From Macrostomum lignano (taxonomy: Eukaryota), in NCBI GenBank assembly GCA_002269645.1, contig NIVC01000772.1, positions 1 through 64,000 of the forward strand: a stretch of DNA of 64,000 nt, written 5' to 3'. Positions 4,615 through 50,792 of the stretch are shown one piece after another (the first letter of the stretch is position 1; every line of letters starts with the position of its first letter). Both the position numbers and the translations under genes were made by a program. The notes under the pieces were generated by a model that saw only the letters and a program-made list of their open reading frames with translations, made no database searches and had not been told where the DNA came from.

Positions 4615-7600
4615 CTAGGCGGCGAAGGAGGTTTGCACGTGCGGGAGGAAAGCTATGTGGGTGTCAGTTACACAGCATGTGCCAAGCACGTCCACCACGG
4701 GGAGACAGAAGTGCATGCCGCCGATGTCGCCGAATGGGTTGTCGACGACGCGCTGAATGTGCCTCAGTCGGCAGCCGTCGTTCTGTGCGACGCCCGAGAT
4801 GTAGTATTCCGGGTCCAGAAGGCAGACGGTACGAAGGCGACGCACCATCAGGATTGCAGTCCCGCGGGTGGGGGACCTGCGGATGGCGTCGACGCGACCG
4901 AAAGCCAGTTGGACACCGTCGTCACTGGCGGCGAAGGCGACGAAGCAGCACAGGGACCGCTGGTGCTGTAGCGCGGGCAAGTAGCGCTCAATGCGCCATC
5001 CGTTGGTCAACAGAGCCCAGCGGAACTCGTCGTCATGTAGCTTGGTGTACACCCTGGTCCCGTCGGCCATGGTCTCTTGGACACCCTGAAGGAATCCACG
5101 GGCCGCAAAGGGCGAGGCCAGGCCCAACTGGTGCATGACGGCACGCCTGCTGAATTGCCGTCTGATGGCAGAGTGCACCTGAGTGAAATGAAGGGTGGGA
5201 GGCGCCCGTTGCAAGTTAGGTAACGGTCTGATGCAGCAACGCAAGCCCTCGGAGGGGAACATGGTATCAAGGGGGAACCTTTGTAATTATATATACCACG
5301 ATAACCCAGGGGTGGGTTTCTAGTGCGATACAAGAGTGGGCATCCTGCATACGTACTGACTACTAGTGAGTAGAATATAGAGGCGTAGATGCCATTATAC
5401 TATATTTTTCTAATTAGAGAAAAGGGTCTCTCTGCGTACCTGATCACCGACGAACCTGGCGCCCTTGACGCGCGTTTTGAGGCCGTAGTGCAGAGACTCG
5501 AACAGGCCGGCGGAGGTGCGCCACACGGGTCCGAAGAGAAAGGCTGCGGGAACGAGGTGCTCACAGACCTGGTGGGCATTGTAGGTCATGGCGGCCGGCG
5601 AAAACCCATCCTTCAGGCTGGCGTAGAATACTCGCAGGGTCTTCGCTGCACGAGTAACTTCCGTCAGCGGGCAGTTCTCCAGAGACAGCCAGAAGATGGA
5701 AGAGGACAGGAGCAGCAGTTGATTGTAATAGAACGGTCCCAGCGTGTCGCCGAGAACCATGGGGCCGTACACCAACAGCCAGCACTCAAATTCGTGCCCG
5801 CGGAAGTGGCCGAGGTCCGCCAGGGTGCGAGGGCCCCGCTGGTGCGACGCAGGCACTCGAATACTGGCCGCCTTGGCGTCCACTTCAGCCACATGGCGGG
5901 ACAAGTCCGGGTTCTCGGCCATCTTGTCAGGTCGCTTGCCGACGGGCAGAAAGTGCTGCCGCAGCAGCCAACCGACAACGCCGACGAGGCACTGATGGAG
6001 GTAGCAGGGCGGGCAGGAGGTGATGAAGTCGAAGCCCTGCAGCCGATGAAGAGGAGACAGCCTGACGACGCCGAGGTTGTGGCCTGCGCCCGCCGGAATC
6101 GTGGTCGCCAGGAGGATGGTGTCCTGCAATGCCCGGTACCGCGGCCGTGTGCAACCGGCGTCGGATGCTGCTTGCAGCGCGTCGGCCGAAAGCTCGCATG
6201 GGAAAATGCGCGCATTTCCTCCGCGGTCGGCATCATGGAGAGTCACGGTGTAACAGTGATCGCAGCCGTACACTGCTGAGCAGTGCTGTAACCCAGTCAC
6301 CTCAACCCTCTGAGGCGCGTCAAGCACGAAGAGGAGCGGATGGAAGCGGATGCAGCCGCCACGCGTGCCGTCTCGTCCACCACCTGTGCGGAACATAACA
6401 CCCTCGATGCGAAGGCTGTTCAGCTGGGCCACCAGCCACGGCAGGAAGGCGTCCACGCTCACCTTGTTCCTGCAGGCCCACAGAGCGCAGACCACCGTGA
6501 AGCGCGCTCGCATGTGGTCGGGGACCTCATTCACGGTAAGGTACACGGGGCAGATGTTGTACACCGCCCGGCTGAACACGGAAAATGCATCGATGTTGAC
6601 CGTGACCGTCAGATCTGAGCGAGCGGCCTTGTCAATGAGGTGCGTAAAGGCCGAGTATGCCGTGCTTTGCCACAAGCTCAGACCACCCGGCCGCCGCGTG
6701 ACGTCCGCGGGGAAGGAGACGACCGACAACAGGCCGCAGCGCTCAATGAGCTGCCGTAGCTGGGCTCGCACATCCATCCGCCAGACCTTGGCGACGCGGT
6801 CCACTGACGAAAACTGCTTTCCGCAGGGTTCGCAGGTCAGTGGAAGGGCCTCCTCCACCAGGGGCCGGCTGCACCTAGGACAAAAAAGAAGTCGTTCGGA
6901 GCGCAGGGAGTTGCAGGACTCCAGAAACCGTCGCAGGCGGTACGGGTTGTCGGCAAACACGGCGTCTGGGGGAAGCGCGAGCTTCGTGTAAAGCAGCAGG
7001 TCCGCCGTGGCGTTTCGCGACAACTTGTGCTTCTCGGCTAGGAGCTCTCCGTACACTGCCAAAGTGGCGTATGACAGGTGCGGCATTGTGCGATGCACCG
7101 GTTGCAGAAACCCTGGCGCGATGTGAACGACGCCGTCGTCGCCGCCATGGGCTGCCCCTTCGTCGACAGCACCGCTAGCACCGCCAGCCCCGTCGCCAGC
7201 ACCGCCAGCCCCGTCGCCAGCACCGCCATCACCGTTGACACTGTCAGCGGATTCCTCGATGACGTCGTCCCATAGCGCACCCTGGCGGATGGAAGAGAAA
7301 GGGTAGGAAGGGGAGGAAGGAGGGAATCATAACTAGATTGGTTCTAGGCAGCCGATGAACATTGCGTGCTTAAGTTTGCTGAGTGCTAACTGATATTTGC
7401 AGGCAGGATCACATCAGCCACGTATACGCACGAGTGCCAGCCTTCAACAGTACAATGCAAGCCTTACGTCATCACCGTCATCATCAGACGTCGCATCGCT
7501 GGGGTCAGGACTGCGGTCGGATCCGCGGCCAGAGGCTCCATCGGAGCTGCGGTCAGACCCACGTTCGGAGTCGCAGTCGGATCCGCGGCCAGAGGCTCCA

Positions 7601-8178
7601 TCGGAGCTGCGGTCAGACCCACGTTCGGAGCCGCAGTCGGATCCGCGGCCAGAGGCTCCATCGGAGCTGCGGTCAGACCCACGTTCGGAGCCGCAGTCGG
7701 ATCCGCGGCCAGGGGCTCTATCGGAGCTGCGGTCAGACCCACGTTCGGAGCCGCAGTCGGATCCGCGGCCAGGGGCTCTATCGGAGCTGCGGTCAGACCC
7801 ACGTTCGGAGCCGCAGTCGGATCCGCGGCCAGAGGCTCCATCGGAGCTGCGGTCAGACCCACGTTCGGAGCCGCAGTCGGATCCGCAGCCAGGGGCTCTA
7901 TCGGAGCTGCGGTCAGACCCACGTTCGGAGCCGCGGTCGGAACTGCAGTCAGAGCTAGAGCTGAAAAGCTCAGCAGGACCGTCAGATGAGGCAACACCAC
8001 CGGCATCGTCCTCGTCATGGTTAGCTGCACCTTGCATCGAACTAGATGCTGCGGCTTGGCCAAACTGCAGCACACGCATGCACTTACTTGCAGCTGCAGC
8101 TGCACGCCGATCGGACCGACAGACTGCCTCCAGCTTTCTCTTACGGTCGCGCGCTTTGATATGTTTGGCAAAGTCCAT
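4615..8178 (-). CDS. CMC/CACTA-type DDE transposase, about 1038 aa, 3 exons
   Basis: Exons 8178-7468, 7281-5440 and 5178-4615 are all phase 0 with GT-AG introns. Motifs: N-terminal basic patch RDRKRKL, CPRC...CEPC finger, NIDAF (D), VLDAP (D), YGCDHC, CYLH, FRGHEFECWLL, YNAHQVCEHL and FES (E). Confidence 0.9.
7513..7945. repeat. 60-bp exonic tandem repeat (about 7 copies) in transposase exon 1
   Basis: Unit GAGCCGCAGTCGGATCCGCGGCCAGAGGCTCCATCGGAGCTGCGGTCAGACCCACGTTCG; read on the minus strand it encodes SDCGSERGSDRSSDGASGRG. Confidence 0.95.
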
Positions 8179-8465
8179 TGCCACGAAGACTTTTGGCAGC
8201 TGGCTGAAATGCGCTAGAGGATATGCGCATGGGAGACATGTCAGATGGTATTGCGAAACTACAGCTTTAAAAAATATCCATGTTGTTGGATTGTCTTTCA
8301 AGTTGTCTAAAGCCATACGTATCATCAATACATGCTCTATGCCCCATGCTCCTATGCTCTAGATCTATACATGCCATTAGAACACCCTTTCTACTGAGAC
8401 AGTCCCAGTCCCGTTCAGGACCCAAGTGTATGATGTAAAAGCTGTATTGCATAAGTCTTACTGTC

Positions 8466-8655
8466 AAAGTCTCACAAAGTCCTACGAAGAGTCACACAAA
8501 GTCCTACAAAGTCTCACAAAGTCCTACAAAGAGTCTCACAAAGTCCTACAAAGAGTCTCACAAAGTCCTACAAAGAGTCACACAAAGTCCTACAAGGGGC
8601 TACAAAATCCTACAAACAGAACTACCACAAAGTCGTACAAACTGTTACAAAGTCA
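8466..8655. repeat. Degenerate ~22-bp minisatellite CACAAAGTCCTACAAAGAGTCT upstream of the transposase
   Basis: Direct reading of the sequence. Confidence 0.85.
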
Positions 8656-8929
8656 TGTCGGTAGTAGCCTTTGCTCACAACCTGAATTCATGGCAATATC
8701 TGCTACATCTCTGTACGACTTCTATCCGCCAATGCCGTATAACGTTTGCAACAAAATCAATGAAGGGTCGCTATGAATCGAAACGTCGCATATTGAAGCG
8801 TGGGCTTTGTTGGATACTTTAGCCAATGCAGTTCCTGATTTATTTTGTGTGGGACACTTTTGCCAAAATAGCATGAAATTAGACGCATAGAAAATTAAGA
8901 GAACATGGGGACAGATAAAGACATATCGA

Positions 8930-9180
8930 CAGTGCCGACGGGTAGTGCCGACGAGCAGTGCCGACGGGTAGTGCCGACATGTCGGCACTACTGGGCAGTG
9001 CCGACGAGCAGTGCCGACGGGTAGTGCCGACGGGCAGTACCGACGGGTAGTGCCGACAGTCGGCACTACCCGGTCGGCACTCAGTGCCGATACTGAGTGC
9101 CGATCGGCAGTCAAATCGACCCTGACTGCCGACAGGCAGTGCCGATCGGCACTCGGAGTGCCGACGGATTTTCAATCGGG
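8930..9180. repeat. Subterminal repeats and terminal sequence of the CACTA-like element
   Basis: More than 15 copies of AGTGCCGA(C) and its reverse complement GTCGGCACT in direct and inverted orientation, stopping at 9180. Confidence 0.8.
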
Positions 9181-9872
9181 CTGACGATGTGAGCTAAATT
9201 TGACCATGTGAAATGAAAATTTGGCGAAATAGCGCTTATGGCACTTGATGCAGGAGCTGAGACTGGCTGACAGATGATCTCGGGCCCACGTCCCTGAGTT
9301 CGATTTCTGTGCCAAAAGGCCACATTTAATATTGAATAATTTTGAGTTCATCAACGGTAATTTAAACCCTAAAAACATATACAGCATTGGGTCTGGCTTC
9401 AATCAGAAGCAATTAGAAATTTTGTGCTGAATTTTGTGCTGAATTTTGTGTGGAATCGAACTAGGGGTCGTTGTGCGAGAGTCAGTGTTTATCACAGAGC
9501 TGCTCTGCCCCCCCCCTAAGTAACTAGTTATGTATCAATTTTTCTAAATTTAATTTACGCTTAATTAACATTTCCTATGGGCCTCTGATTTTTCTGAAGC
9601 TTTGCAACTGCAATTCCTCTTTTTGCAGTTTTTCTACCGCGACATACAGGTAGTGGATAATAACACTAGGAGCAACAGACACTATATGATTCTGAACAAC
9701 ACAGGGCACTATGAGCGACTCACGCAGTATTTGGCTGACAATAAGGCAATTTTTGGCGGAGTTATTGAGTCAGCCAAATGTTCTGACAGAGTCAGGTGAG
9801 GTCTGTTTTAGATTTTTTAATTTCAAAGCTGTACTCTAGTTTCTTAATCCCATGTTTTGTCAGTTCCTTTTT

Positions 9873-11425
9873 CCCTAGTTCCCTACTTACCTAGTTCCCT
9901 AGTTCCCTAGTTCCCTAGTTCCCTAGTTCCCTAGTTCCCTACTTACCTAGTTCCCTAGTTCCCTAGTTCCCTAGTTCCCTAGTTCCCTACTTACCTAGTT
10001 CCCTAGTTCCCTAGTTCCCTAGTTCCCTAGTTCCCTACTTACCTAGTTCCCTAGTTCCCTAGTTCCCTAGTTCCTTAGCTCCCTAGTTCCTTAGTTCCCT
10101 AGTTCCCTAGTTACCTAGTTCCCTAGTTCCCTAGTTCTTTAGCTCCCTATTTCCCTATTTCCTTAGTTCCCTAGCTCTCTAGTCCTCTTATTCCCTAGTT
10201 CCCTAGTTCTCTATTTCCTTAGTTCCTTAGCTCTCTAGTCCCCTTATTCCCTAGTTCCCTAGTTCCCTAGTTCCCTAGTTCCCTAGTTCCTTAGCTCCCT
10301 AGTTCCTTAGTTCCCTAGTTCCCTAGTTCCCTAGTTTCCTAGTTCCCTAGTTCTTTAGCTCCCTATTTCCCTATTTCCTTAGTTCCCTAGCTCTCTAGTC
10401 CTCTTATTCCCTAGTTCCCTAGTTCTCTATTTCCTTAGTTCCTTAGCTCTCTAGTCCCCTTATTCCCTAGTTCCGTAGTTCCGTAGTTCCCTAGTTCCCT
10501 AGTTCCCTAGTTCCTTAGCTCCCTAGTTCCTTAGCTCCCTAGTTCCTTAGTTCCCTAGTTCCCTAGTTCTCTAGTCCCCTTATTTCCTAGTTCCCTAGTT
10601 CCCTAGTTCCCTAGTTCCCTACTTACCTAGTTCCCTAGTTCCCTAGTTCCCTAGTTCCCTACTTACCTAGTTTCCTAGTTCCCTAGTTCCCTAGTTCTCT
10701 AGTCCCCTTATTTCCTAGTTCCCTAGTTCCCTAGTTCCCTTGTCCCCTTATTCCCTAGTTCCCTAGTTCCCTAGTTCCCTAGTTCCCTACTTACCTAGTT
10801 TCCTAGTTCCCTAGTTCCCTAGTTCCCTTGTCCCCTTATTCCCTAGTTCCCTAGTTCCCTAGTTCCCTTGTCCCCTTATTCCCTAGTTCCCTAGTTCCCT
10901 AGTTCCCTTGTCCCCTTATTCCCTAGTTCCCTAGTTCCGTAGTTCCGTAGTTCCCTAGTTCCCTAGTTCCCTAGTTCCCTAGTTCCCTAGTTCCCTAGTT
11001 CCCTAGTTCCTTAGCTCCCTAGTTCCTTAGCTCCCTAGTTCCTTAGTTCCCTAGTTCCCTAGTTCTCTAGTCCCCTTATTTCCTAGTTCCCTAGTTCCCT
11101 AGTTCCCTAGTTCCCTACTTACCTAGTTCCCTAGTTCCCTAGTTCCCTAGTTCCCTAGTTCCCTACTTACCTAGTTCCCTAGTTCCCTAGTTCCCTAGTT
11201 CCCTAGTTCCCTACTTACCTAGTTCCCTAGTTCCCTAGTTCCCTAGTTCCCTAGTTCCCTACTTACCTAGTTCCCTAGTTCCCTAGTTCCCTAGTTCCCT
11301 AGTTCCCTACTTACCTAGTTCCCTAGTTCCCTAGTTCCCTAGTTCCCTAGTTCCCTAGTTCCCTAGTTCCCTACTTACCTAGTTCCCTAGTTCCCTAGTT
11401 CCCTAGTTCCGTAGTTCCCTAGTTA
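9873..11425. repeat. 8-bp satellite (CTAGTTCC)n filling a DEG/ENaC intron
   Basis: Direct reading; includes CTACTTAC and related variants. Confidence 0.97.
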
Positions 11426-12021
11426 GCCAGTTTCCTACTTCTCTGTTCACTTGCTTCCTAGATCCATTGTCCCTGTTTCCATAAATCCCAAGTTCCCTAG
11501 TCGTCTCAGTTAGGAGTTAATTTTCGGTCAAAGCTTTTCTGGTATTCCTGATAAAAACGGAACAGGCTCGTACGCTGCTGTCTCATTGCGCAGGCACCGC
11601 CAGAACACGGCTGGCGTGAGCGCTGCCGTGGCCTCCTGCAAAATGCTCTGCAATGTGAACCAGTACAACGTATTCCCAGACAGAGTGCCCTGGCCATCGA
11701 ACCTGAAATTGGCCGAGTTCATCATCCACGGCATTGGCAGACGGCGCAAAATCCATTTGAAGTCGCAGAACATCACTAGCAAGGTGGTTCAGAATCTGAT
11801 TGGCAGAACGCTGCACGTCATAAATAACCCGTCAATTAGTGTAGTGGATTTGTACCCAATCAGCACGAAGGCCACTGTGACTTCCGAGGCTCTGGCCTAC
11901 GAGTTGCGCAATCTATTCTCAGATCTGGGCGGAATTCTCGGTAAATTATAAGCAGTTTTGGCTTTTCGAGAATTGCTCAATTTTAAAATGTTTTGAAAAC
12001 ATTAATGTTTTAAGGGTCGTG

Positions 12022-12029
12022 ACGGACAG

Positions 12030-12092
<63 letters not shown>

Positions 12093-12119
12093 GGCAGACA
12101 GACAGACACTAAGACACTA

Positions 12120-12211
<92 letters not shown>
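12022..12211. repeat. (GACA)n microsatellite
   Basis: Direct reading of the sequence. Confidence 0.97.
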
Positions 12212-14270
<2,059 letters not shown>

Positions 14271-14314
14271 ACAGACAGAAAGACAGACTAAGACACTAAG
14301 ACACTAAGACACTA

Positions 14315-14351
<37 letters not shown>

Positions 14352-14754
14352 CCAAGACAGACAGACACCAAGACAGACAGACAGACCGACATTCGAGCTT
14401 GAAGGCTTCATAGTCAAAAATAGAAGTGGAACAGAAACTCGCAGCGAATGTACTGTGCAATGAGGCCAAGCAGGAATGGGCAGAGGGGTTAAAATGAAGC
14501 TGAGCCGTGACAACTTTGCGCATAATTCTTTCAGCAACTTTGGCACAGCCAATTTCTCTAAATTCGTGCATTCGTCCTTTACTTTTTGTGCGGTGACGTG
14601 AGAGTTCTGAGCCAGCAGTTCGTCTCTGTTTTTGGCAGCTGCATACGAAAATGCAGTTGATAAATACCAACTGCGAGCCACTGGCACCGCTCATCGCCTC
14701 TACGCTTTATTACTGGCTTTCACTTTTAATAAAACAACTGACTGAGCGGCCGAG

Positions 14755-16342
<1,588 letters not shown>

Positions 16343-16586
16343 ACTCTCGTTCCTGGCGTTAACCGAATTTAACCGAATTCGCAACGTTAATTGAGATTTT
16401 TTAATTCTCTCCTCATACTTCACCGAGCTTCTATGCGCATTTTTACTAGCGAATCGGCGCGCACAGTCACTGCAATGTCAAAAAATATCCATTGTTATTG
16501 CGGATTCTCACTTTTATTAAATGTGTCGGTGTCTTAAATTGAGCGTCATAATTAGATTTTCTAAACTTCGCCCGTATTAGTATTAG

Positions 16587-17297
<711 letters not shown>

Positions 17298-17637
17298 ACG
17301 CGCTAGTATTTTATTTGTTGACGTCTCTTCCGTTGCCAATTTGTTTTTTATCTTAGCAGTAGCAGCAAAGCGTTTGCCCGATTGCTATTCAACACAACGC
17401 AATGCTCCTAGTTTGGCAGAAGTGGTTCAAGTTTACAAGGACCTGCCTGAAAAAATGCTTTGAATTGCAGAACGGATGCTACTGGATTCATACCGTGATA
17501 CTAGATGCGGTAGATTAATTTTCAGTGGACCCAACACGAACTCCCCTAAGGTGTCCACATTTCAATGCTCTATTGTCTCGGCCAATAAGATATGTACATT
17601 CCCGCCTCCCGTTCTCACTCAGTCTCAAAGAGCGCAG

Positions 17638-17669
<32 letters not shown>

Positions 17670-17778
17670 GCTGCTCGCTATCTTTGATATAAGCAAACAT
17701 TTACGGACACACAATATTAAGGACACGTTTAGTCAACTAAAAAAGGTCTTCCTTTACTTGCAAGCGTAGCAAAAATTC

Positions 17779-17858
17779 ATGTTGTTGCTGAGACTGCTGC
17801 CGCTGATCTGCACCTTGGCGTGTGTGGCATCGGGTAAGGGATTTTTTGACTGATTGGC

Positions 17859-17893
<35 letters not shown>

Positions 17894-18158
17894 AAGACAG
17901 ACAGACACACAGACACACAGACACACAGACAGACAGACAGACAGACAGACACTAAGACAGACAGACAGACAGACATACAGACGGACAGACAGACAGATAG
18001 ACAGACAGACACTAAGACAGACAGATAGACAGACAGACACTAAGACAGACAGACAGACAGACCGACACTAAGACAGACACTGAGACAGACAGATAGACAG
18101 ACAGACACTAAGACAGACACTAAGACAGACAGACAGACACTAAGACAGACAGACAGGC

Positions 18159-18239
<81 letters not shown>

Positions 18240-18338
18240 CTAAGACACACAGACAGACAGACAGACACTAAGACAGACAGACAGACAGACATACAGACGG
18301 ACAGACAGACAGATAGACAGACAGACACTAAGACAGAC

Positions 18339-18391
<53 letters not shown>

Positions 18392-18394
18392 CTA

Positions 18395-18439
<45 letters not shown>

Positions 18440-20258
18440 TCAGACACGCAAATCTCCCAGCCCCAGAGCAGCTGTCATTCGCCCAGTACTGTTCGGCATC
18501 ACGCGAGCTGCACGTGTTCAAGCAGGCCAGCGAGCCCCATGCTGCTGCCCGCGTCTGCCTCTACAGCATGCAGTACGATGAGCCGCCCATTGTGCTAAGG
18601 AATCTCAAAGCCGTAAGCCAGACAAGCGATTAAGATGTTTAGTGGATTAGATAAAACTATGACGTCACCTCAGACAGAACTAGTACTGGGCTTCAATCGG
18701 TACCTTATTCATTTCAGACGACATTCTACTCAACGAATCAAACCATTCACCTGAAATTTGACGAAATTTGAAATTTTGCATGGAAGGTGATTATATGCTA
18801 CTGAGACTCAGTAGTTTAACTGTGTTTTTGTTAAATTTTAGAAGCATTTATAAACTGTAACTGCAGACACAAGAAGGATAATTTGCAGAATGGTAATCTT
18901 CCTAAGTTTCTAAAGGTTTCTAGAGCTTCCCAGAGATTTCCAGAGCTTTCTTGATGAATCGTTAATGAGGAAGGGCGCCAGCACCAAGGGGCGCCAGCAC
19001 CAAGGGGCGCCAGCACCAAAGGGGCGACAGCACCAAGGGGCGCCAGCACCAAGGGGCGCCAGCACCAAGGGGCGCCAGCACCAAGGGGCGCCAGCACCAA
19101 GGGGCGCCAGCACCAAGGGGCGCCAGCACCAAGGGGCCTCTTGCTTTAACGGGCGCCAAGCACCAAGGAGCCTCTTGCTTCAAGGGGCAAGGAGTGCCAT
19201 AATTTTTAACCTACTTTGAAGTTAAAATATAAATTTTTCAATCGTTGCAGATAGAATGGTTGAAGGCTCCGGACCAGCGGCCTTCAGATGAAAACTGGAG
19301 CTGTAAATTCTCCACGCCATTTGAGACCTGCTTCATCGAAGGTGTGCCATGTAGATTTTTTCAATGTCCCATCCAACAATAATCAAGCCCGATATATGCA
19401 TAATTCTGATAATAATGATAATAATAATAATATCTGATTACACCTGCCCAGGTGTGCAACCGACAGCTCAGTCGCAGCTATTGCGCGGCGCATCTGAAGG
19501 CTGCGTACGGCTTTTCAGTCCAAGGACTGGGGGTCGCCACTCACACCCTCAGTTACCCCAGCTAATGCTGGCACCCATTTTACAGCTGAGTGAACTGAAG
19601 CAATGCAGAGTTAAGTGTCTTGCTTAAGGACACAAATTGTTCCTAGTGGGTCGAGAATCGAACCCCCGACCTTTCAGTCGTGATTCCAATGCTCTGACCA
19701 CTACCATCTGGCTACAGCCATCCTTACTGAACAGTAGTATATCTTTAGTGTCAATCATTATCAATTTTGTTTTAAGTGAAATTACGAGCGTAGTTGCTTA
19801 GAGTTCACGGCAAGATAATGTCGTTTAAATTGAAGCCATATTAGCAAAGAATTTCTAAGAAAATTACCGGTATTTCACCGTCCTTTACTATACAAAGGTC
19901 TTTTTAGTGTCGCTCTTTGCTTGATTTCTCCTCAGTTGGCGAGACGATCGGTTTATTACCTGAAATGGAGCATCAGCATCAGATGGTGATCAGCCAGGAC
20001 TTGAAGTGCTTCCTGCCGCCTAAGCAGTTCAACTCACTGCTTGATGGCTGCGGGGTCCAGAGTAATGCAAGAAGAGAAGGCATTGCGTTCGCAACGTCCA
20101 GTGTGGTGGTTGTCGCTTCAGTGCCTGCAGCCCTCATCGCCGTGGTTGCAGCTCTGCTGTGCAAAAAAAGCTGCTGCAAAAGGCAGATAGATGGGCCAAA
20201 TGCAATGGATAGAGAAAACGGGGCTGAAGCTCCACTCAATCCTGATCCCAGATCCTGA
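17779..20258 (+). CDS. Uncharacterised single-pass type-I membrane protein, about 206 aa, 4 exons
   Basis: Exons 17779-17833, 18461-18612, 19251-19341 and 19936-20258 join in phases 1, 0 and 1. Signal peptide [18 protein letters not shown], a Cys-containing ectodomain, and TM segment [20 protein letters not shown] followed by KK. Confidence 0.7.
17858..18438. repeat. Complex (GACA)n array in intron 1 of the membrane-protein gene
   Basis: Direct reading; contains CACTAAG and CATA interruptions. Confidence 0.97.
18971..19136. repeat. 16-bp GC-rich minisatellite (GCGCCAGCACCAAGGG)
   Basis: Direct reading; intronic. Confidence 0.95.
19405..19705 (-). mobile_element. tRNA-derived SINE with a CORE/MIR-like segment
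   Basis: The minus strand begins with A-box TAGTGGTCAGAGC and B-box GGTTCGATTC. The plus strand carries GTTAAGTGTCTTGCTTAAGGACAC, resembling the MIR core, and an (ATA)n tail lies at about 19405-19432. Confidence 0.6.
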
Positions 20259-21148
20259 TCCCAGATCCTGATCCCAGATCCTGATCCCAGATCCTGATCC
20301 CAGATCCTGATCCCAGATCCTGATCCCAGATCCTGATCCCAGATCCTGATCCCAGATCCTGATCCCAGATCCTGATCCCAGATCCTGATCCCAGATCCTG
20401 ATCCCAGATCCTGATCCCAGATCCTGATCCCAGATCCTGATCCCAGATCCTGATCCCAGATCCTGATCCCAGATCCTGATCCCAGATCCTGATCCCAGAT
20501 CCTGATCCCAGATCCTGATCCCAGATCCTGATCCCAGATCCTGATCCCAGATCCTGATCCCAGATCCTGATCCCAGATCCTGATCCCAGATCCTGATCCC
20601 AGATCCTGATCCCAGATCCTGATCCCAGATCCTGATCCCAGATCCTGATCCCAGATCCTGATCCCAGATCCTGATCCCAGATCCTGATCCCAGATCCTGA
20701 TCCCAGATCCTGATCCCAGATCCTGATCCCAGATCCTGATCCCAGATCCTGATCCCAGATCCTGATCCCAGATCCTGATCCCAGATCCTGATCCCAGATC
20801 CTGATCCCAGATCCTGATCCCAGATCCTGATCCCAGATCCTGATCCCAGATCCTGATCCCAGATCCTGATCCCAGATCCTGATCCCAGATCCTGATCCCA
20901 GATCCTGATCCCAGATCCTGATCCCAGATCCTGATCCCAGATCCTGATCCCAGATCCTGATCCCAGATCCTGATCCCAGATCCTGATCCCAGATCCTGAT
21001 CCCAGATCCTGATCCCAGATCCTGATCCCAGATCCTGATCCCAGATCCTGATCCCAGATCCTGATCCCAGATCCTGATCCCAGATCCTGATCCCAGATCC
21101 TGATCCCAGATCCTGATCCCAGATCCTGATCCCAGATCCTGATCCCAG
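20239..21148. repeat. Homogeneous 13-bp minisatellite (ATCCTGATCCCAG) x70
   Basis: 910 bp equals 70 x 13, with no variant units seen. Confidence 0.98.
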
Positions 21149-21644
21149 GTTAGCAAAATCATACACTGATTTGACCTCTGACTTACTAATTTAATAAACT
21201 AATCCAGAATATTATACACTTAACACTATAGCACGAAACACCTTGTATTCAATCTGGCTTAAATGCTTTGTGTTTGCTTTTTCAAACGTAACTGACAGAT
21301 CGATAAATAGATAGAAACAACTTTTTTAGTAGTACATGTAGATTTTTTTTCATATTTCAGTTTAAAAACACAGCGACGACTCTGATCTCGCACTCTATAT
21401 TTTTCCATTTAATTTTTTCCTGCTTTTACATATGGACCCATTGCCTCAAAAGTGCATCGAATGAAACTAGTCGAGCCGGGCAAATTTTTCGCCTAATTGA
21501 ACTGTATTCCCTCGCGATTTGCTTGCACTGTCTATGGCCCGGGGCCCGGGGCAAAAGCAATGCTGATGAGCGTGTTTTCCCCCGAGGCATTGAAATGTGC
21601 AACAAGAACGCTAAATAGACAGCGGATCCGGTGTGTTTGCAAAC

Positions 21645-22682
21645 ATGGTAGACAAAGACAAGCAGAGAGTCTTCTGCACACCTGGCTTCGGCACGTTCGG
21701 CTCGATGATCGACTTGGGCCTGGACCTGGAGCCGCTGAGGAACCGGATTCGCGAATGCAAACTGCGCTACCACCGCGAGCTGTGGAGCATCATCTGCGAC
21801 TTGGGCATTCAGGGCGGCGACTCTGGCTGGAAGAAACGCGACGACGACGAGGGCGGCGGCGAAGGCGGCGGCGAAGGAGGCGGCGATGGCGGCGGCGATG
21901 GCGGTGGCGAAGACGGCGGCGAAGGCGGCGGCGATGGCGGTGGCGAAGGCGGCGATGACGGCGGCGATGGCGGCGGCGAAGGCGGCGGAGATGACGAGGG
22001 AGACGAGGCCAACCAGAGCAACATCAGAGCGATTCGCAATCGCAACAGGTCCAATGCGGCGGCCAATTTCGGGCGTAATTCTTTTCAAAGATCTTCGACT
22101 GCTCTGAGACAGCAGCGGCAGCAGCAACAGCAGCGGCAGCAGCAGCGGTTGCCACCAAAGCAGCAGCAACAGCAGTATCAACAGCAACAGCATCGGCAGA
22201 GGCAGCGACAGCAGCCTCAGTGGCCTCCGCAACAGCTTCAGCCGCAGTGGCCCCCGGCTCCACCGCTTCAGCAGCCTCAATGGCCTCAACAGCAGCCGCA
22301 GATTCTGCATCAGCAGCAGCCATGGCTTCCACCCAGCATTCCCGGTCCATCGGCCCCGCTAGTAATCGAAAATGCTAATTATTTGTCTCATGCTCGAGCG
22401 AAACTGCCTTCAGTCGGCAAGAGTGCCAGCAGAAGAGGTGGGGGAGGCGGCGGCGGCATCTGCAACGGCAGCTGCAGCAGCAGTTCGCTCACATCTGCCG
22501 ATGACGTCACAGGGTGCGAATTCTCCGAGCTGCCGGCCTTGCCGGACATCGAGTCAGCCCCGTCGTCATTGTTAGCCCAGTCGAAAAAGTTTGTGCCACT
22601 CCGTTGCGGCGATTGGTCGTCGCGTAAAACAAAAGAAACTGGCAGTGACCGGCGTCGGAAGCACGGCAAGCACAAGCACTGA
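21645..22682 (+). CDS. Putative low-complexity protein (G/E/D repeat, Q/P-rich, basic C-terminus)
   Basis: Open frame with a globular-looking N-terminus (LEPLRNRIRECKLRYHRELWSIICDLG), poly-CAG tracts like those of neighbouring genes, and a C-terminal RRRKHGKHKH. No family recognised and the 5' end is uncertain. Confidence 0.45.
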   Translation: MVDKDKQRVFCTPGFGTFGSMIDLGLDLEPLRNRIRECKLRYHRELWSIICDLGIQGGDSGWKKRDDDEGGGEGGGEGGGDGGGDGGGEDGGEGGGDGGGEGGDDGGDGGGEGGGDDEGDEANQSNIRAIRNRNRSNAAANFGRNSFQRSSTALRQQRQQQQQRQQQRLPPKQQQQQYQQQQHRQRQRQQPQWPPQQLQPQWPPAPPLQQPQWPQQQPQILHQQQPWLPPSIPGPSAPLVIENANYLSHARAKLPSVGKSASRRGGGGGGGICNGSCSSSSLTSADDVTGCEFSELPALPDIESAPSSLLAQSKKFVPLRCGDWSSRKTKETGSDRRRKHGKHKH

Positions 22683-25336
22683 TAATGAAAAAGCGACTGA
22701 ACCTCCGCGCTAAACTTGCCATGTACTTTCATTTTTCCTAAAACGTAATTAGTTAAAATTTTATTCTCTCCTTATAATAAGTATTTCTGCGAAATGAAAA
22801 AGGTGTCAGAAATCGTTAATTACTTCCATACTCTGATTTGCGAGCTTTCAACTTTGCGGACGAAAAAAGATATTACACCACTTATTGTTTTTTGACAATG
22901 TATACGTGCTCATATTCATTTTTGGCCAATTTCAAAACAAATATATTTTACGCTATTTTCTGCATTAAAACAAAAGACTTCTGATATGTCTGTATCATTG
23001 CGTCGTGGATCATTTTCTTATAGTTTGAGATATAGGTTTAGAAAATGGTATAATACGAATAGCCGATCGATAGATTGCAATACTCACATAATGAAGATAG
23101 CAATAACCATGCAGCTCGGCCAGATATTCGTTGACGAGTTTACCGGCACCCTTGAAAATACGCGGAAATTATAGTTTTTTTTCAAATGAAGATTGCATGG
23201 ACATAAAATTCTTGAAATAGGGTAGACTAAAAAACTGAAAAAGCAAAAAATGTGATGGGGAATAGCTCATAAGAGGACTAATGCGAAGTGTAACACAGAT
23301 TGTGAGTGCATTGAATTTATAGGTATTATGTACAGGAGTCAAGTGATCTGATCTGCTAGGGGATCAGTGGATGTAAGTTCTAATCGAAGGACGCTGTTGC
23401 TTGTGCAGTTTGGCAGGTTGAAAGAGAGCTTAAAAAGGACGTTTTTATTGCGTAACGATTTCTTTTATTTCAACATTGCTCGCAAGTGGTCGCCGTATTC
23501 CGCTTCATGATTAAAAAAATAATTTACGTTTGATTCAACGTTCATTTAACGCTCAATTATCGTGAATTTTTAAATGTGCGCATTTCTCTACAAGTTTTAA
23601 CTAAAAGAAATGTGAAATATTTAGAAATTTTTCTTACAGATGATATATTATTTACCAGAATAACTTTTTCGTACTTTAATTTTAATCTTAATTTGAAGAA
23701 ATGGCTGGCTTCCTTCCCGTAATAAAGTGCGTTTTTAAATTGCAAAAGCTGCCAAGTTAATCCAGCAATGAATTTCCCAGAATTGAATTGAGAAAATATG
23801 CGCCGTAAGTGTAGTAAAATAGTTTGAAGCTTACGAGCGGATGTCTGTTAGCCGCGCAATTAGTGACTAAAATTTTGTCAATAATTGCGATAAAAAGATT
23901 AAAAAATAACAATAAGAAACAAATAAAAACATATTATTTATTGTCTTATTGAAATACGAATTTTTGTTTACTTCGTATTGTATTGCACCATGAACACCAT
24001 TTTTATACGTGCTCATATTCATATGATAACCATTGATAACCATTGCACGGTCATTGACTCATCGCTCACACTTTTATTATAATACTTATAGAAATAGACT
24101 CAATAAAGTTGAAACATCAAATATGCACATTATGCAGTAGCATAGCCAGAATTTCCATCCTGACCTACTATGCAATAAAAACAAATTACTTTACTAGCGT
24201 TCGCATCAATTAGCCAGTATAATTATTCATAGCTTATAAACTTACTTTCTATAGCCTAGGCCTATTTAAAATAACAAAATCCTTATTTAGTAGCCAGGTT
24301 GCGGATGGTATGCATGTACGCCGGAACTTTTCTGGCATACAAAAATGGGGTTAAATGGCCACCCTAAGTCCTTGGCATACACAATCAGCATACACAACCC
24401 CTGGCGAAATTTATTGGTATACACTATTGGTGTACACAATAACAGCCATGCATACTTTTTTGGCGTACAAATTTTGGTGAATAAATTCATGCCATACATG
24501 AAAATTGTAATATAAATTAATGTTTTTATGTAAAGTAACGGAAAATTTATATCGTTAGTGATAAAATTTTTGCTTCTTTGTAATTAGCAATAAATAAAAC
24601 TAGTGTAAATTTTTGCTAAGAGTATCAATTTTGCATCATATTTTTTGTAGGTATAATTTAATTATACTAAATTAGTAGGCCTATCATTGGTGACAATTAT
24701 AGAGACTACTTTATAAACTCAAGACAAGTTAATATAATAGTATCTAATTATACCTAAGGTTTGATATTCAATTCTCAACTTACTTAGAATAATTTGTATC
24801 TTCAGGAAAGACAGGAACTTGTACCTTTCTGCATTGCTTTGGTTTACTTAGTTATAAAATAGGTAATACAATTAACTAGGATAATTGAGAGCATATGTGG
24901 TGACCCCCCTTCCCCTAGTCTTTATACTATATAGCTATGTATAGGTAGCCTTTAGATACATTGCACAAAAACTATAGCTAAGTTGGTTACATATCTAGCC
25001 TATTTGGGGTAGTTATAATCATACTATATTGAAAAGAAATATGTATTATAATTATATAAGACTAAGAGTGTTTTTAGTTTGAAAATCAACAATATCTACT
25101 TTAAAATTGAAAAAATAAATATTCTAAGCAACAAATAAACTACTTTTATTGTTTAATTAAAGAAATTAAAAATAAAAATATTCTAATAATAATACGTAAA
25201 ATAAGAGCAATATGGCTTAGGGCCTATATAGTGTGTACTTTGTTATATGCATACTAATAAGGATGCCAACAAGGTTTATTATTAGGTTTTAAAAAGAAGA
25301 AATGAAAATGTACATAACCAAGTATAAAAATAAATA

Positions 25337-26940: not shown

Positions 26941-29185
26941 ATGAAGGTCAAACGCCTGGCCAACGCAGCCGGAGTCGCCCTGCCACTCGACGCGGACTAT
27001 GCAGAGAGTCTTGAAGGCGGCGTTGCAGCTGCGGCAGATTCAGCTGGCCAAGCCGGCTCCGGCGTTGCCGAGGATGACGACGAGGGCTTGGATCTGGACG
27101 AATTCATTCAGCAGATGATGATGGATGGTGGCGGTGACGGCCAAGCGCTGGTGGCTGACGAGCTGCCCATGCCCGACCAGCAGCAGCAGCAGCAGCAGCC
27201 TCAGTATTTCACTGGGCCGGTCATGCAGCCAGCAGCGGCCGGGCTTGGCGCTGCTCAAGCCAACGGATTCGTCGATAATGGCTTTCGTTACCATGGCAAC
27301 TATGGCGTCCAACAGCCGTCGCTAGTACAGCCGCAGTTCAATCTGCAGTCTGCAGCTACCGCTAATTCATCTTCCGTCATCTTTCCACTGTCTGGTCCGC
27401 AGTCGCTGGGTTCAGAGTTTCAGCAGCAGCAGCAGCAGACTGCTCAGGTGTCCCAGCAGCAGCAGCAGCAGCCGCCTTCGGGAATTCGAGCTGCCATTAA
27501 TCTGCGTAAGCGACCTCTGCAATCGCAGCAGCAACAGCTTCTGCTAGATTTGCCCGAATCGTCTAACGACGCATTCGATACTAAGCCTATTATCCAGAAG
27601 CAGCAGCAGAAGCAGCAAAATCAGGAATCCAATTCCAAATCGTCTGTTGGCGGTGATTCGAATTCAACAGCGATAACAGCTGGGGACGCTGGCGGCGGAG
27701 ATTTGACTATAGAGGATCCGAGCGAGAGAAAACGATTGAAGAATGCTCAATTAGCTAGGTGAGTTGACCTGCTCAGATTGTATCAGCGTCACTTTGTTTG
27801 TTGGGTCAATTCCAGGGTCAGTGCCAGTGTGTTGGGTCAGTGCCAGAGTCTTTAGGGTCAGTGCCAGTGTGTTGGGTCAGTGCCAGAGTCTTTAGGGTCA
27901 GTGCCAGAGTCTGTAGGGTCAGTGCCAGAGTCTGTAGGGTCAGTGCCAGTGTCTGTAGGGTCAGTGCCAGTGTCTGTAGGGTCAGTGCCAGTGTCTGTAG
28001 GGTCAGTGCCAGTGTCTGTAGGGTCAGTGTCTGTGTCTGTAGGGTCAGTGCCAGTGTCTGTAGGGTCAGTGCCAGTGTCTGTAGGGTCAGTGCCAGTGTC
28101 TGTAGGGTCAGTGCCAGTGTCTGTAGGGTCAGTGTCTGTGTCTGTAGGGTCAGTGTCTGTGTCTGTAGGGTCAGTGCCAGTGTCTGTAGGGTCAGTGCCA
28201 GTGTCTGTAGGGTCAGTGCCAGTGTCTGTAGGGTCAGTGTCAGTGTCTGTAGGGTCAGTGCCAGTGTCTGTAGGGTCAGTGCCAGTGTCTGTAGGGTCAG
28301 TGTCTGTGTCTGTAGGGTCAGTGCCAGTGTCTGTAGGGTCAGTGTCTGTGTCTGTAGGGTCAGTGCCAGAGTCTGTAGGGTCAGTGCCAGTGTCTGTAGG
28401 GTCAGTGCCAGTGTCTGCAGGGTCAGTGTCTGTGTCTGTAGGGTCAGTGCCAGAGTCTGTAGGGTCAGTGCCAGAGTCTGTAGGGTCAGTGTCAGTGTCT
28501 GTAGGGTCAGTGTCAGTGTCTGTAGGGTCTGTGCCAGAGTCTGTAGGGTCAGTGCCAGTGTCTGTATGGTCAGTGTCTGTGTCTGTAGGGTCAGTGCCAG
28601 TGTCTGTAGGGTCAGTGTCTGTGTCTGTAGGGTCAGTGCCAGTGTCTGTTGGGTAAGGGTTAATTTCGATTGAGTCGGGGGTCTGGACCAACACCTATTG
28701 TATGCTATAACGAGGCTTCTAAAAATTGCACTTCAATGTTCAGAGAAAATCGAGAAAAGAAAAAGCAACACGTTCAAGAGCTGGAGAATCGAGTCCGAGA
28801 CCTCGAATCGGCATTGTCCGCCTCGCGCGAGCGCGAATCGAGCTTAACAAGCGAATTAAGCTCATCTAAGCGGCATAACAACTATCTGCTGTCGGTGCTG
28901 TACAGGCAGAGCGAGCTGGCCTCGTTCTTGTCCACCGTGCCTGCGCTGGTGTCCCGAGAGCGCCAGCTGCAGCTGCAGCAACCGCAAGCAACTAGAGATA
29001 CGGACAGTCAGACAACTACAGGCGGAATTTGTTTGCACCTTGACAATCAGGAGACTGTATCTGTTTTGTTGTGCGACAAATGCGCCGCTCTGGGTGGCGG
29101 CGGCAGCGTCGGTGACGCGGTGCTAGGCGGATCTGCTTCGCAGCCTTCGTCTTTAACTGGGAATCAGTCGAATCTGTCGCTTTGA
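26941..29185 (+). CDS. CREBZF: CREB/ATF bZIP factor, CREBZF/Zhangfei-like, 419 aa, 2 exons
   Basis: Exons 26941-27758 and 28744-29185 join in phase 2 to give ERKRLKNAQLARENREKKKQHVQELENRVRDLE. The C-terminal GGICLHLDNQETVSVLLCDKC matches the CREBZF-type tail as I recall it. Confidence 0.8.
27814..28648. repeat. 21-bp minisatellite (GGGTCAGTGCCAGTGTCTGTA) filling the bZIP intron
   Basis: Direct reading; lies between the donor at 27759 and the acceptor at 28743. Confidence 0.97.
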
Positions 29186-29286: not shown

Positions 29287-29905
29287 CTAAGGGGTCGTAG
29301 TGGCATTTACTGTAACACCTGAGAGAATAGTGGCACCCGCTGAAGGAACTGAAGGAATGGTGGTACCCGATGAAGTAACTGAGGTGGTAGTGTCACTCAC
29401 TGAAGGACCTGAGGTCGTAGTGTCACTCACTGAAGGACCTGAGGTCGTAGTGTCACTCACTGAGAGGACCTGAGGTCGTAGTGTCACTCCCTGAAGGAAT
29501 GGCGAGACCCGCTGAAGGACCTGAGGAGGTGACAGCACCCACTGAAGGGCCTGAGGAGGTGACAGCACCCACTGAAGGGCCTGAGGAGGTGACAGCACCC
29601 ACTGAAGGGCCTGAGGAGGTGACAGCACCCACTGAAGGGCCTGAGGAGGTGACAGCACCCACTGAAGGGCCTGAGGAGGTGACAGCACCCACTGAAAAGC
29701 CTGAGGAGGTGACAGCACCCACTGAAGGGCCTGAGGAGGTGACAGCACCCACTGAAGGGCCTGAGGAGATGACAGCACCCACTGAAGGGCCTGAGGAGGT
29801 GACAGCACCCACTGAAGGGCCTGAGGAGGTGACAGCACCCACTGAAGGGCCTGAGGAGGTGACAGCACCCACTGAAGGGCCTGAGGAGGAGAAGACAGAA
29901 CCCAC
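29287..29905 (-). other. 30-bp repeat region reading as a mucin-like Ser/Thr-rich frame with one frameshift
   Basis: The minus-strand unit encodes PSVGAVTSSG. A 1-nt insertion near 29463 separates it from the SDTTTSGPSV...VTVNATTTP* frame. Coding status unproven. Confidence 0.35.
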
Positions 29906-49845: not shown

Positions 49846-50792
49846 TGGTAACTGGTGATGTGACATTATGTGCTGGTGAAGTGACCATGTTGACTGGTGA
49901 TGTGACTCTATTGACTGGTGATGTGACCTTATGTGCTAGTGATGTGCCCATAGTGACTGGTGATATGACCTTGTTGACTGGTGATGTGACCATGTTGACT
50001 GGTGATGTGACCTTATGGGCTGGTGATGTGACCATGTTGACTGGTGATGTGACCTTGTTGACTGGTGATATGACCATGTTGACTGGTGATGTGACCATGT
50101 TGACTTGTGATGTGACCATGTTGACTGGTGATGTGACCATGTTGACTGTTGATGTGACCATGTTGACTAGTGATGTGACCTTGTTGACTGGTGATATGAC
50201 CATGTTGACTAGTGATGTGACCTTATGGGCTGGTGATGTGACCATGTTGACTGGTGATGTGACCATGTGGACTGGTGATGTGACCATGTTGACTATTGAT
50301 GTGACCCTGTGGACTGGTGATGTGACCATGTTGACTGGTGATGTGACCATGTTGACTGGTGATGTGACCTTATGGGCTGGTGATGTGACCTTGTTGACTG
50401 GTGATATGACCATGTTGACTGGTGATGTGACCTTATGGGCTGGTGATATGACCATGTTGACTGGTGATGTGACCTTATGGGCTGGTGATATGACCATGTT
50501 GACTGGTGATGTGACCTTGTTGACTGGTGATATGACCATGTTGACTGGTGATATGACCTTATGGGCTGGTGATGTGACCTTGTTGACTGGTGATATGACC
50601 ATGTTGACTGGTGATGTGACCTTATGGGCTGGTGATATGACCATGTTGACTGGTGATATGACCATGTTGACTGGTGATATGACCATGTTGACTGTTGATG
50701 TGACCATGTTGACTAGTGATGTGACCTTGTTGACTGGTGATATGACCATGTTGACTGGTGATGTGACCTTATGGGCTGGTGATGTGACCATG
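49846..50792. repeat. 21-bp minisatellite (GTGATGTGACCATGTTGACTG)
   Basis: Direct reading of the sequence. Confidence 0.97.

What the first reader, a model, noticed from the sequence alone, without database searches (positions are those of the whole stretch)
20239..21193. A coding 13-mer expanded to 70 perfect copies and now supplies the stop codon
Seen: the array starts inside the last exon (AAT CCT GAT CCC AGA TCC TGA) and ends ...CCC AGG TTA GCA. Collapsing it to one unit restores the frame ...NPDPRLAKSYTDLTSDLLI*, whereas two or more units give ...NPDPRS*. Inference: a recent expansion removed a 14-aa cytoplasmic tail containing a YxxL (YTDL) sorting-type motif and added about 0.9 kb of satellite to the 3' UTR, i.e. 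a satellite caught at birth within coding DNA. An alternative reading is that AG|GTTAGC after the array is a splice donor.
Basis: partly seen in the sequence, partly recalled or inferred. Interest (0 to 1): 0.7.

Follow-up and report, generated by a model that had tools for sequence, protein, structure and literature searches.

The report
Perfect 13-bp minisatellite ending a flatworm ORF
A flawless, length-variable 13-base tandem repeat in the flatworm Macrostomum lignano sits at the end of an unconfirmed small membrane-protein reading frame; it is one of many such arrays in this genome, and the claim that it cut off a protein tail is plausible but unproven.

Summary

The window is from Macrostomum lignano, a free-living flatworm. 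A second copy of the locus (assembly Mlig_3_7, contig NIVC01000930.1) has the same array at the same junctions, with 94.0 perfect copies. The array is therefore real, variable in length and recently homogenised.

It is not exceptional in kind. Tandem arrays make up 33% of the window, and nearly all of them differ in copy number between the two copies. This is the only one that is 100% pure.

The "coding" part is not established. The ORF has no homologue in 5.8 billion or 1.84 billion proteins, and no annotated protein contains it. Support is indirect:
- a conserved acceptor and a good ATG context;
- a hydrophobic helix followed by KKSCCKR;
- weak codon bias in the claimed frame;
- no indels between the two copies;
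- the only AATAAA in 7 kb, lying on the proposed old stop codon.

"Collapsing restores the frame" carries no statistical weight (P about 0.3). No one-unit allele was found, and YTDL is unsupported.

Verdict: an ordinary hypervariable minisatellite born in place. The truncation story is about 30% likely.

The parts
19909..19935 (+). Pyrimidine-rich tract ending in CAG: a candidate 3' splice site or spliced-leader trans-splice acceptor for the ORF exon.
   Evidence: The sequence gtcgctctttgcttgatttctcctcag|TTGG is conserved between the window and L001 (1 change). The roughly 120 nt just upstream carry a 38-nt deletion and about 20 substitutions. The UniProt model A0A1I8HH97 (P0007) uses the same acceptor...CFIE|VGETI.
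19936..20258 (+). Candidate terminal or sole coding exon. ATG at 19965 (context GAAATGG); stop TGA at 20256-20258, formed by units 1-2 of the array. From the ATG the product is 97 aa: MEHQ...NPDPRS.
   Evidence: Translation. Codon-usage log-odds are +13.5 bits in this frame against -11.9 and -31.0 in the other two, but the ORF ranks only 14th of 52 ORFs under a stricter background. Against L001 there are 4 substitutions and 0 indels. No homologue was found.
20097..20162 (+). Predicted transmembrane helix [22 protein letters not shown], followed by KKSCCKR (a positively charged, Cys-rich stretch next to the membrane).
   Evidence: Its 19-residue Kyte-Doolittle maximum is 2.83, the second highest of 99 ORFs of at least 80 codons outside arrays. 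Antisense and low-complexity chance ORFs reach similar values.
20239..21148 (+). The array: (ATCCTGATCCCAG)x70.0, 100% pure. The unit is a diverged 6+7 dimer (ATCCTG|ATCCCAG) with two GATC sites.
   Evidence: The allelic or paralogous copy L001 16769-17990 has 94.0 perfect copies. Neither strand has unusual hairpin propensity (z about +0.5).
21149..21194 (+). Hypothetical ancestral tail: G + 14 codons (LAKSYTDLTSDLLI) + TAA at 21192-21194, followed by a second TAA. It is read only if the array has exactly one unit.
   Evidence: Log-odds are +4.0 bits in this frame against -11.6 and -5.6 (15 codons, low power). It is identical in L001, but so are all 484 nt of the right flank. Chance of an open frame this long is about 0.34.
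21193..21198 (+). AATAAA polyadenylation signal overlapping the TAA TAA stops.
   Evidence: It is the only AATAAA on the + strand between 16340 and 21400. The window rate is 0.53 per kb, so one falling within 60 nt of a given point has P about 0.03.

Best explanation
This is a young, hypervariable, locus-specific 13-bp minisatellite (VNTR) of Macrostomum lignano. It arose in place by tandem duplication of one 13-nt stretch (AATCCTGATCCCAGG, itself a 6+7 proto-repeat). Replication slippage or unequal exchange has since expanded it and kept it homogeneous. It lies between a candidate small single-pass membrane-protein ORF (19965-20258) and the only AATAAA of the region (21193), so it is most likely inside a terminal exon. 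Thirteen is not a multiple of three and the unit carries TGA in one register, so every allele with two or more units ends the ORF at ...NPDPRS* and turns the array into 0.9-1.2 kb of 3' UTR. Shown: the array, its purity, its length difference between two copies, its clean junctions and the frame arithmetic. Inferred: that the ORF is translated (about even odds), that a one-unit ancestor encoded the 14-residue tail, and the expansion mechanism.
For: The array is perfect: 70.0 copies and 94.0 copies at identical junctions in NIVC01000930.1. The organism and second locus were identified through the neighbouring EF-hand gene. Arrays are a general, unstable feature here: 33.5% of the window and 31-34% of three other loci. 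Nearly every array differs in copy number between the two copies, e.g. the 16-mer 10.2 vs 73.8, TGTC 57 vs 81, TTAG 178.5 vs 187.5. This is the only 100%-pure array among the 17 of at least 300 nt. Evidence for an exon: a conserved acceptor next to heavily diverged sequence; no indels in the ORF against 10 gap openings in the adjacent 1.3 kb; codon bias in the right frame; a hydrophobic helix followed by KKSCCKR; a unique AATAAA; and use of the same acceptor by an independent gene model. The GenBank annotation excluded transcripts that overlap repeats, so the missing gene call is uninformative (PMC5730564).
Against: No homologue of the ORF was found in 5.8 billion clustered proteins. In 1.84 billion representatives, the only three hits are translated CRISPR repeats. 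No M. lignano UniProt or NCBI protein contains it. Codon bias is unremarkable under a stricter background. The ORF lies in an island of raised divergence: 1.3% against 0-0.4% in most other segments. It shows 2 nonsynonymous and 2 synonymous changes, so strong purifying selection is not evident. No one-unit allele was seen. The ML2-based model P0007 is frameshifted five residues into the exon, which could be a PacBio error or a real lesion.
Confidence: 0.5

Rival explanations
1. The ORF is a chance open frame. The array is then just one more non-coding minisatellite in the spacer between the EF-hand gene (which ends near 16540) and the downstream gene (ATG at 21645). Nothing was truncated.
For: About 20 stop-to-stop ORFs of at least 116 codons are expected by chance in 64 kb, and many are seen. 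The ORF has no homologue and no annotation. Its codon score ranks 14th of 52, and a known wrong frame scores higher. Chance ORFs reach similar hydrophobicity. The region is more diverged than its surroundings and shows 2 nonsynonymous and 2 synonymous changes. The frame match on collapse is expected about a third of the time.
Against: Conservation resumes about 27 nt before a strong acceptor, after a heavily diverged stretch. The ORF has no indels, against 2.4 expected at the rate of the adjacent non-coding sequence. The ATG context is good, and a helix followed by a basic/Cys stop-transfer motif is a specific combination. The only AATAAA in 7 kb lies 45 nt past the array.
Confidence: 0.4
2. 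The array is an intron, like most other arrays in the window. A GC-AG intron from 20183 (AAAAG|GCAGAT) to 21148 (CCCAG|G) would join ...[10 protein letters not shown] to LAKSYTDLTSDLLI* in frame. The tail would then still be made whatever the copy number.
For: Arrays fill confirmed introns almost from donor to acceptor. In the EF-hand gene, intron 14966-15255 is 79% (TGTC)n and intron 15651-16246 is 90% a 20-mer array. The 5-kb 32-mer array runs from 37 nt past a GTGAG donor to within a few nt of the next exon. Every 13-mer unit ends in a pyrimidine-rich ...CCCAG. The phase of the GC site fits (read from the sequence).
Against: There is no GT anywhere between 20159 and the end of the array. 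GCAGAT is a poor match to the GC-AG donor consensus (GCAAGT). All confirmed donors in the window are GTRAG. The in-frame fit is a 1-in-3 coincidence.
Confidence: 0.04
3. The perfect array, or its length, is an assembly or polishing artefact.
For: Both public assemblies of the DV1 line draw on the same PacBio reads (PMC5730564). Short-read polishing can erase rare variants in tandem arrays. The assemblies have many flagged errors.
Against: The array is found at identical junctions in two distinct copies of the locus, which differ at many flanking sites. Sixteen other arrays in the same sequence keep 81-97% identity, so polishing does not homogenise arrays in general. Arrays of 0.9-1.2 kb are well within PacBio read length (general knowledge).
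Confidence: 0.03

Closest known systems
Hypervariable minisatellites / VNTRs (e.g. human MS32, CEB1; from my own knowledge)
   Same: Head-to-tail units of 10-60 bp, an array about 1 kb long at a single locus, and copy number differing between haplotypes (70 vs 94). Flanking DNA shows raised divergence and what look like exchange end-points.
   Different: This array is completely pure, whereas classical minisatellites carry interspersed variant units. It is also one of very many arrays in a genome region that is one-third tandem arrays.
Tandem repeats in terminal coding exons that change the C-terminus (MUC1 VNTR frameshift in ADTKD; CEL VNTR deletions in MODY8; from my own knowledge)
   Same: A tandem repeat in or near the last coding exon sets where the protein ends.
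   Different: Those are in-frame (3n) coding repeats, and a 1-bp indel shifts the frame. Here the unit is 13 bp, so the first duplication itself closes the frame. The repeat is never translated beyond six codons. That the gene is translated at all is unproven.
The high simple/tandem-repeat load of the M. lignano genome (Wudarski et al. 2017, PMC5730564)
   Same: Same species. The paper reports 15% of the genome as simple and tandem repeats, and 180 Mb of duplicated blocks at least 95% identical in the DV1 line. This accounts for both the array-rich setting and the second copy of the locus.
   Different: The paper does not describe individual arrays, their purity or their relation to reading frames. 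The local density here (31-34%) is about twice the genome average.
YxxPhi tyrosine-based sorting signals of membrane-protein tails
   Same: YTDL fits the pattern Y-x-x-hydrophobic, and it lies in what would be a cytoplasmic tail after a transmembrane helix.
   Different: It exists only in a hypothetical one-unit allele. It is not conserved in any relative because no relative exists. Chance readily gives such a four-residue pattern in 14 residues (my rough estimate is under 10%).

Membership tests
Minisatellite / VNTR | Head-to-tail tandem array of a unit of about 10-100 bp | tested here: met
   13-bp unit, 70.0 copies, 100% matches.
Minisatellite / VNTR | Copy number varies between alleles or copies of the locus | tested here: met
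   70.0 copies in the window against 94.0 in L001, at identical junctions. The other arrays vary too.
Satellite DNA family (dispersed or multi-locus, long heterochromatic arrays) | The same unit is present at many loci or in very long blocks | tested here: inconclusive
   No other copy in the 64-kb window or in L002-L004, 63 kb in total. The whole genome could not be searched with these tools.
Coding (in-frame) tandem repeat | Period divisible by 3 and an open frame through the array on the coding strand | tested here: not met
   The period is 13. Every + frame meets TGA within 39 nt. Only the - strand is open, as a mechanical consequence, and its flanks score negative for coding.
Protein-coding exon | Homologues, or selection against nonsynonymous and frameshifting change | tested here: inconclusive
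   No homologues. The substitutions are 2 nonsynonymous and 2 synonymous. There are 0 indels against 2.4 expected (P about 0.09).
Protein-coding exon | Evidence of transcription and translation | not testable with these tools
   No transcript data could be reached. The GenBank annotation dropped transcripts that overlap repeats.
Spliceosomal intron | GT (or GC) donor with consensus, and an AG acceptor | tested here: not met
   There is no GT between 20159 and 21148. The only in-phase GC site, GCAGAT, is a poor match. Confirmed donors in the window are GTRAG.
YxxPhi sorting signal | The motif lies in the cytosolic tail of an expressed membrane protein and is conserved or functional | not testable with these tools
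   The pattern is present only in the hypothetical collapsed allele. There are no relatives to test conservation.

The most novel reading that the evidence does not exclude
The ORF is a real, lineage-specific membrane-protein gene of M. lignano. The first duplication of a 13-nt coding stretch removed its 14-residue cytoplasmic tail. The array then grew to 70-94 perfect units within the time it takes a sequence to accumulate a few tenths of a percent divergence. On this reading, a satellite-like array has been caught arising from coding DNA and disabling part of a gene, with the raised divergence of the ORF marking relaxed constraint afterwards.
Probability: 0.3. Interest if true: 0.45.

Novelty: new member of a known kind. 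Interest (0 to 1): 0.22.

Why it matters
If the ORF is a real gene, this would be a clean, datable case of a tandem array arising inside coding DNA and truncating a protein by frame arithmetic alone. Length-polymorphic alleles are available in a laboratory animal that can be made transgenic. As it stands, its main value is as a marker: a perfectly pure, PCR-sized, hypervariable locus. It also illustrates how unstable tandem arrays shape M. lignano gene regions. About one third of the sequence here is arrays, and introns are filled almost end to end. This bears on assembly, annotation and knockout design in that model.

Tried and rejected
- **Homology searches.** The 120-aa collapsed peptide found nothing at E<=10. 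The 107-aa exon, run with full HMMER against 1.84 billion representatives, gave three hits, all translated CRISPR repeats (SMLDGCGIET), which I rejected as spurious. Pfam found no family.
- **Exact look-ups.** The 97-aa product and the Yos1 ORF in public assemblies are not on record. P0004 is not on record either.
- **More copies of the locus through the downstream gene.** L002-L004 turned out to be older paralogous loci (about 76% nt identity) without the ORF or the array, so they give no one-unit allele.
- **Codon usage as proof of coding.** It is positive in the right frame but not discriminating.
- **Hydrophobicity as proof of coding.** The value is high, but chance ORFs match it.
- **Hairpin or slipped-strand propensity of the unit.** None.
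- **Rfam and tRNA scans.** Nothing found. The tRNA-like stretch at 19529-19720 is a SINE; a second, antisense copy lies at 24767-24908.
- **Minus-strand ORF through the array (395 aa).** This follows mechanically from a unit with no stop on that strand; the flanks score negative for coding.
- **Array as part of the EF-hand gene.** Rejected. That gene stops at 16340-16342 and has ATTAAA at 16516.
- **Whole-window repeat finder.** It only re-listed the 32-mer array.
- **Wasik et al. 2015.** The PMC id I recalled for it is not held in the library.
Full report
**1. The observation.**
Window 20239-21148 is a perfect period-13 run of 910 nt: exactly 70.0 copies of ATCCTGATCCCAG, with 100% matches and no indels. 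The unit occurs nowhere else in the window at up to 2 mismatches, apart from one chance hit; 1.4 matches were expected from shuffles and 71 were seen. The base before and the base after the run both break the period, so the junctions are clean and the edge copies are not degenerate.

- The open frame entering the array reads ...NPDPRS, with TGA at 20256-20258.
- One unit would give ...NPDPRLAKSYTDLTSDLLI, followed by TAA TAA.
- Two or three units give PRS*.
- No unit gives ...APLS*.

**2. Organism and setting.**
The gene 3.6 kb upstream encodes a five-exon EF-hand protein (window 14755-16342, GT-AG introns). It is 100% identical to UniProt A0A1I8GKY1 of Macrostomum lignano.

This free-living flatworm has a repeat-rich genome. 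Simple and tandem repeats make up 15% of it. The sequenced DV1 line carries 180 Mb of duplicated blocks that are at least 95% identical (PMC5730564).

In the window, tandem arrays cover 33.5% of the sequence. Seventeen arrays are at least 300 nt long, each with its own unit, and their purity runs from 81 to 97%. The 13-mer is the only one at 100%. Three other M. lignano loci show the same density, 31-34%.

Most arrays with a clear gene context are intronic and fill the intron almost completely:
- EF-hand intron 14966-15255 is 79% (TGTC)n.
- EF-hand intron 15651-16246 is 90% a 20-mer array.
- A 5-kb 32-mer array runs from 37 nt past a GTGAG donor to within a few nt of the next exon.

**3. A second copy of the locus.**
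A cluster member of the EF-hand protein (PAA74684.1) led to NIVC01000930.1:331567-353248 of assembly Mlig_3_7 (L001). L001 is colinear with window 5850-24829.

L001 carries the same array at the same junctions, with 94.0 perfect copies (L001 16769-17990). The array is therefore real, variable in length, and pure in both copies.

Nearly all other arrays also differ in copy number between the two copies:

| Array | Window | L001 |
|---|---|---|
| 16-mer | 10.2 | 73.8 |
| TGTC | 57 | 81 |
| TTAG | 178.5 | 187.5 |
| 20-mer | 26.6 | 25.6 |

Both haplotypes exist in the DV1 line. UniProt models built on the older ML2 assembly match each of them: P0004 matches the window, and P0007 matches L001.

**4. 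Age.**
In most unique segments the two copies differ by 0-0.4% (one reaches 0.6%). The 484 nt to the right of the array are identical. No variant appears in 2,132 nt of array in total. This means the arrays, or their last homogenising event, are no older than roughly the time needed to accumulate a few tenths of a percent of divergence. That figure is my inference from these counts. "Recent" is therefore supported.

The unit is a 6+7 proto-repeat (ATCCTG|ATCCCAG). It has no unusual hairpin propensity. The mechanism, slippage or unequal exchange, is inferred rather than shown.

**5. Is the 13-mer coding? Evidence for.**
- A strong acceptor (ttctcctcag|) lies at 19935. P0007, a gene model built on the ML2 assembly, uses the same acceptor.
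- Between the window and L001, dense substitutions and a 38-nt deletion stop about 27 nt before this acceptor. The sequence is then conserved into the ORF.
- The ORF has 4 substitutions and no indels, whereas the adjacent 1.3 kb of non-coding sequence has 31 substitutions and 10 gap openings. Taking substitutions and indels together, 4 events are seen against about 10 expected at the adjacent non-coding rate.
- The ATG at 19965 has a purine at -3 and G at +4.
- A 22-residue hydrophobic stretch is followed by KKSCCKR. It is the second most hydrophobic segment among 99 ORFs.
- Codon log-odds favour the claimed frame (+13.5 against -11.9 and -31.0 bits), and the tail frame scores +4.0.
- The only AATAAA between 16340 and 21400 overlaps the proposed old stop codons, which has P about 0.03.

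**6. Is the 13-mer coding? Evidence against.**
- No homologue was found in 5.8 billion clustered proteins.
- In 1.84 billion representatives, the only three hits are translated CRISPR repeats.
- No M. lignano protein in UniProt or NCBI contains the peptide. The GenBank annotation deliberately dropped transcripts that overlap repeats, so that particular absence says little.
- Under a stricter background the ORF ranks 14th of 52, and a known wrong frame scores higher.
- Chance ORFs reach similar hydrophobicity.
- The ORF lies in an island of raised divergence (18447-20238: 1.3-4.4%). The island is bounded by the CAGA array and the 13-mer array. The ORF's four changes are 2 nonsynonymous and 2 synonymous.
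- P0007 is frameshifted five residues into the exon. This may be an ML2 base error.

I put the chance that the ORF is translated at about even.

**7. The "restored frame".**
An in-place tandem duplication implies a one-unit ancestor, and that sequence does read through to LAKSYTDLTSDLLI**. The fact has little weight, however. One of three frames had to be joined, and a frame open for at least 15 codons occurs at 34% of positions with this GC content. The tail is identical in L001, but so is the whole right flank. YTDL is a four-residue pattern that chance readily gives.

**8. Rival readings.**
- **(a) Chance ORF.** The array would be one more non-coding minisatellite between the EF-hand gene (ATTAAA at 16516) and the downstream gene. 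That gene starts at ATG 21645 and belongs to the family of BOX15_Mlig025130 and Mlig012493. This is the main rival.
- **(b) Array as an intron.** The array would be intronic like its neighbours. There is no GT between 20159 and 21148. An in-phase GC site at 20183 has a poor consensus. Unlikely.
- **(c) Assembly artefact.** Unlikely, given two distinct copies of the locus and sixteen impure arrays in the same sequence.

The paralogous loci L002-L004 lack both the ORF and the array.

**9. Comparison with what is known, and verdict.**
This works like, and qualifies as, a hypervariable minisatellite (VNTR).
- It is not an in-frame coding repeat, because the period is not 3n and every + frame is closed.
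- It is not shown to be a dispersed satellite.
- It resembles terminal-exon VNTRs that alter C-termini (MUC1, CEL; my own knowledge) only loosely.

The array-rich setting is a published property of this genome (PMC5730564). The finding is a correct and tidy observation of an ordinary kind of element. Its more interesting interpretation, a satellite born in coding DNA that truncated a protein, is plausible at about 30% but unproven. Existing M. lignano trans-splice, poly(A) and RNA-seq tracks, together with sister-species sequences, would settle it.

Noticed in passing
window 1-64000; L002-L004: Tandem arrays make up 33.5% of the window: 17 arrays of at least 300 nt, each with a different unit. 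They make up 31-34% of three other M. lignano loci. This is about twice the published genome average of 15%.
   Followed up: partly
window 14966-15255, 15651-16246, 37612-42694: Introns are filled almost end to end by locus-specific arrays. The two EF-hand introns are 79% and 90% array. A 5,038-nt 32-mer array occupies about 99% of an apparent 5.08-kb intron, between a poly-Q/acidic exon and an exon with an autophagy-receptor zinc finger (Pfam PF18112).
   Followed up: partly
window 18447-20238 vs L001 14032-16768: An island of raised divergence separates two otherwise near-identical copies: 1.3-4.4% plus 10 indels, against 0-0.4% in most other segments. It is bounded on both sides by tandem arrays (CAGA at 17858-18446 and the 13-mer at 20239-21148). 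This suggests exchange or conversion end-points, or local mutagenesis, at arrays.
   Followed up: partly
window 18973-19137 vs L001 14566-15746: The 16-mer array GGGCGCCAGCACCAAG has 10.2 copies in the window and 73.8 in L001, the largest length difference of any array at the locus.
   Followed up: no
window 12021-14391; L001 6211-9637: A tandem segment of about 1 kb is present twice in the window and three times in L001. It carries a (GACA)n array and an exon-like piece encoding LWIGTSVITLLELLEFLGQLLISGLYSARK, which from memory resembles a DEG/ENaC channel TM2.
   Followed up: partly
window 19529-19720 (-) and 24767-24908: A tRNA-like SINE lies about 215 nt upstream of the ORF's acceptor, with a second copy about 70% identical 5 kb downstream. 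ARAGORN and Rfam call neither.
   Followed up: partly
UniProt A0A1I8HH97 (P0007), matching window ~5400-19990: This 1,244-aa 'PKD_channel domain-containing protein' model is a chimera. It strings together frames from several unrelated genes, translated arrays, the EF-hand gene and doubtful exons. It ends frameshifted five residues into the ORF studied here.
   Followed up: partly
window 53463-54115, 29507-29889, 21848-21988, 7516-7941, 27814-28654, 49851-50800: Several arrays have periods divisible by three (78, 30, 12, 60, 21, 42). Some lie inside long open frames, for example the 78-mer in the 1,719-aa coiled-coil ORF 52544-57700. Tandem duplication therefore also builds in-frame coding repeats here.
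   Followed up: no
protein library hits P0001-P0003: The only 'homologues' of the ORF in the 1.84-billion-protein library are translations of CRISPR repeat arrays (recurring SRSMLDGCGIET / VAIDARWLWDRD / RDRCSMAVGSR). This is a source of false hits for short queries.
   Followed up: yes
window 5413-7326 (-): This 638-aa stop-to-stop ORF has its best codon score in another frame and an odd GC profile by codon position (0.47/0.76/0.64). The true coding frame or strand in this GC-rich block is probably a different one.
   Followed up: no
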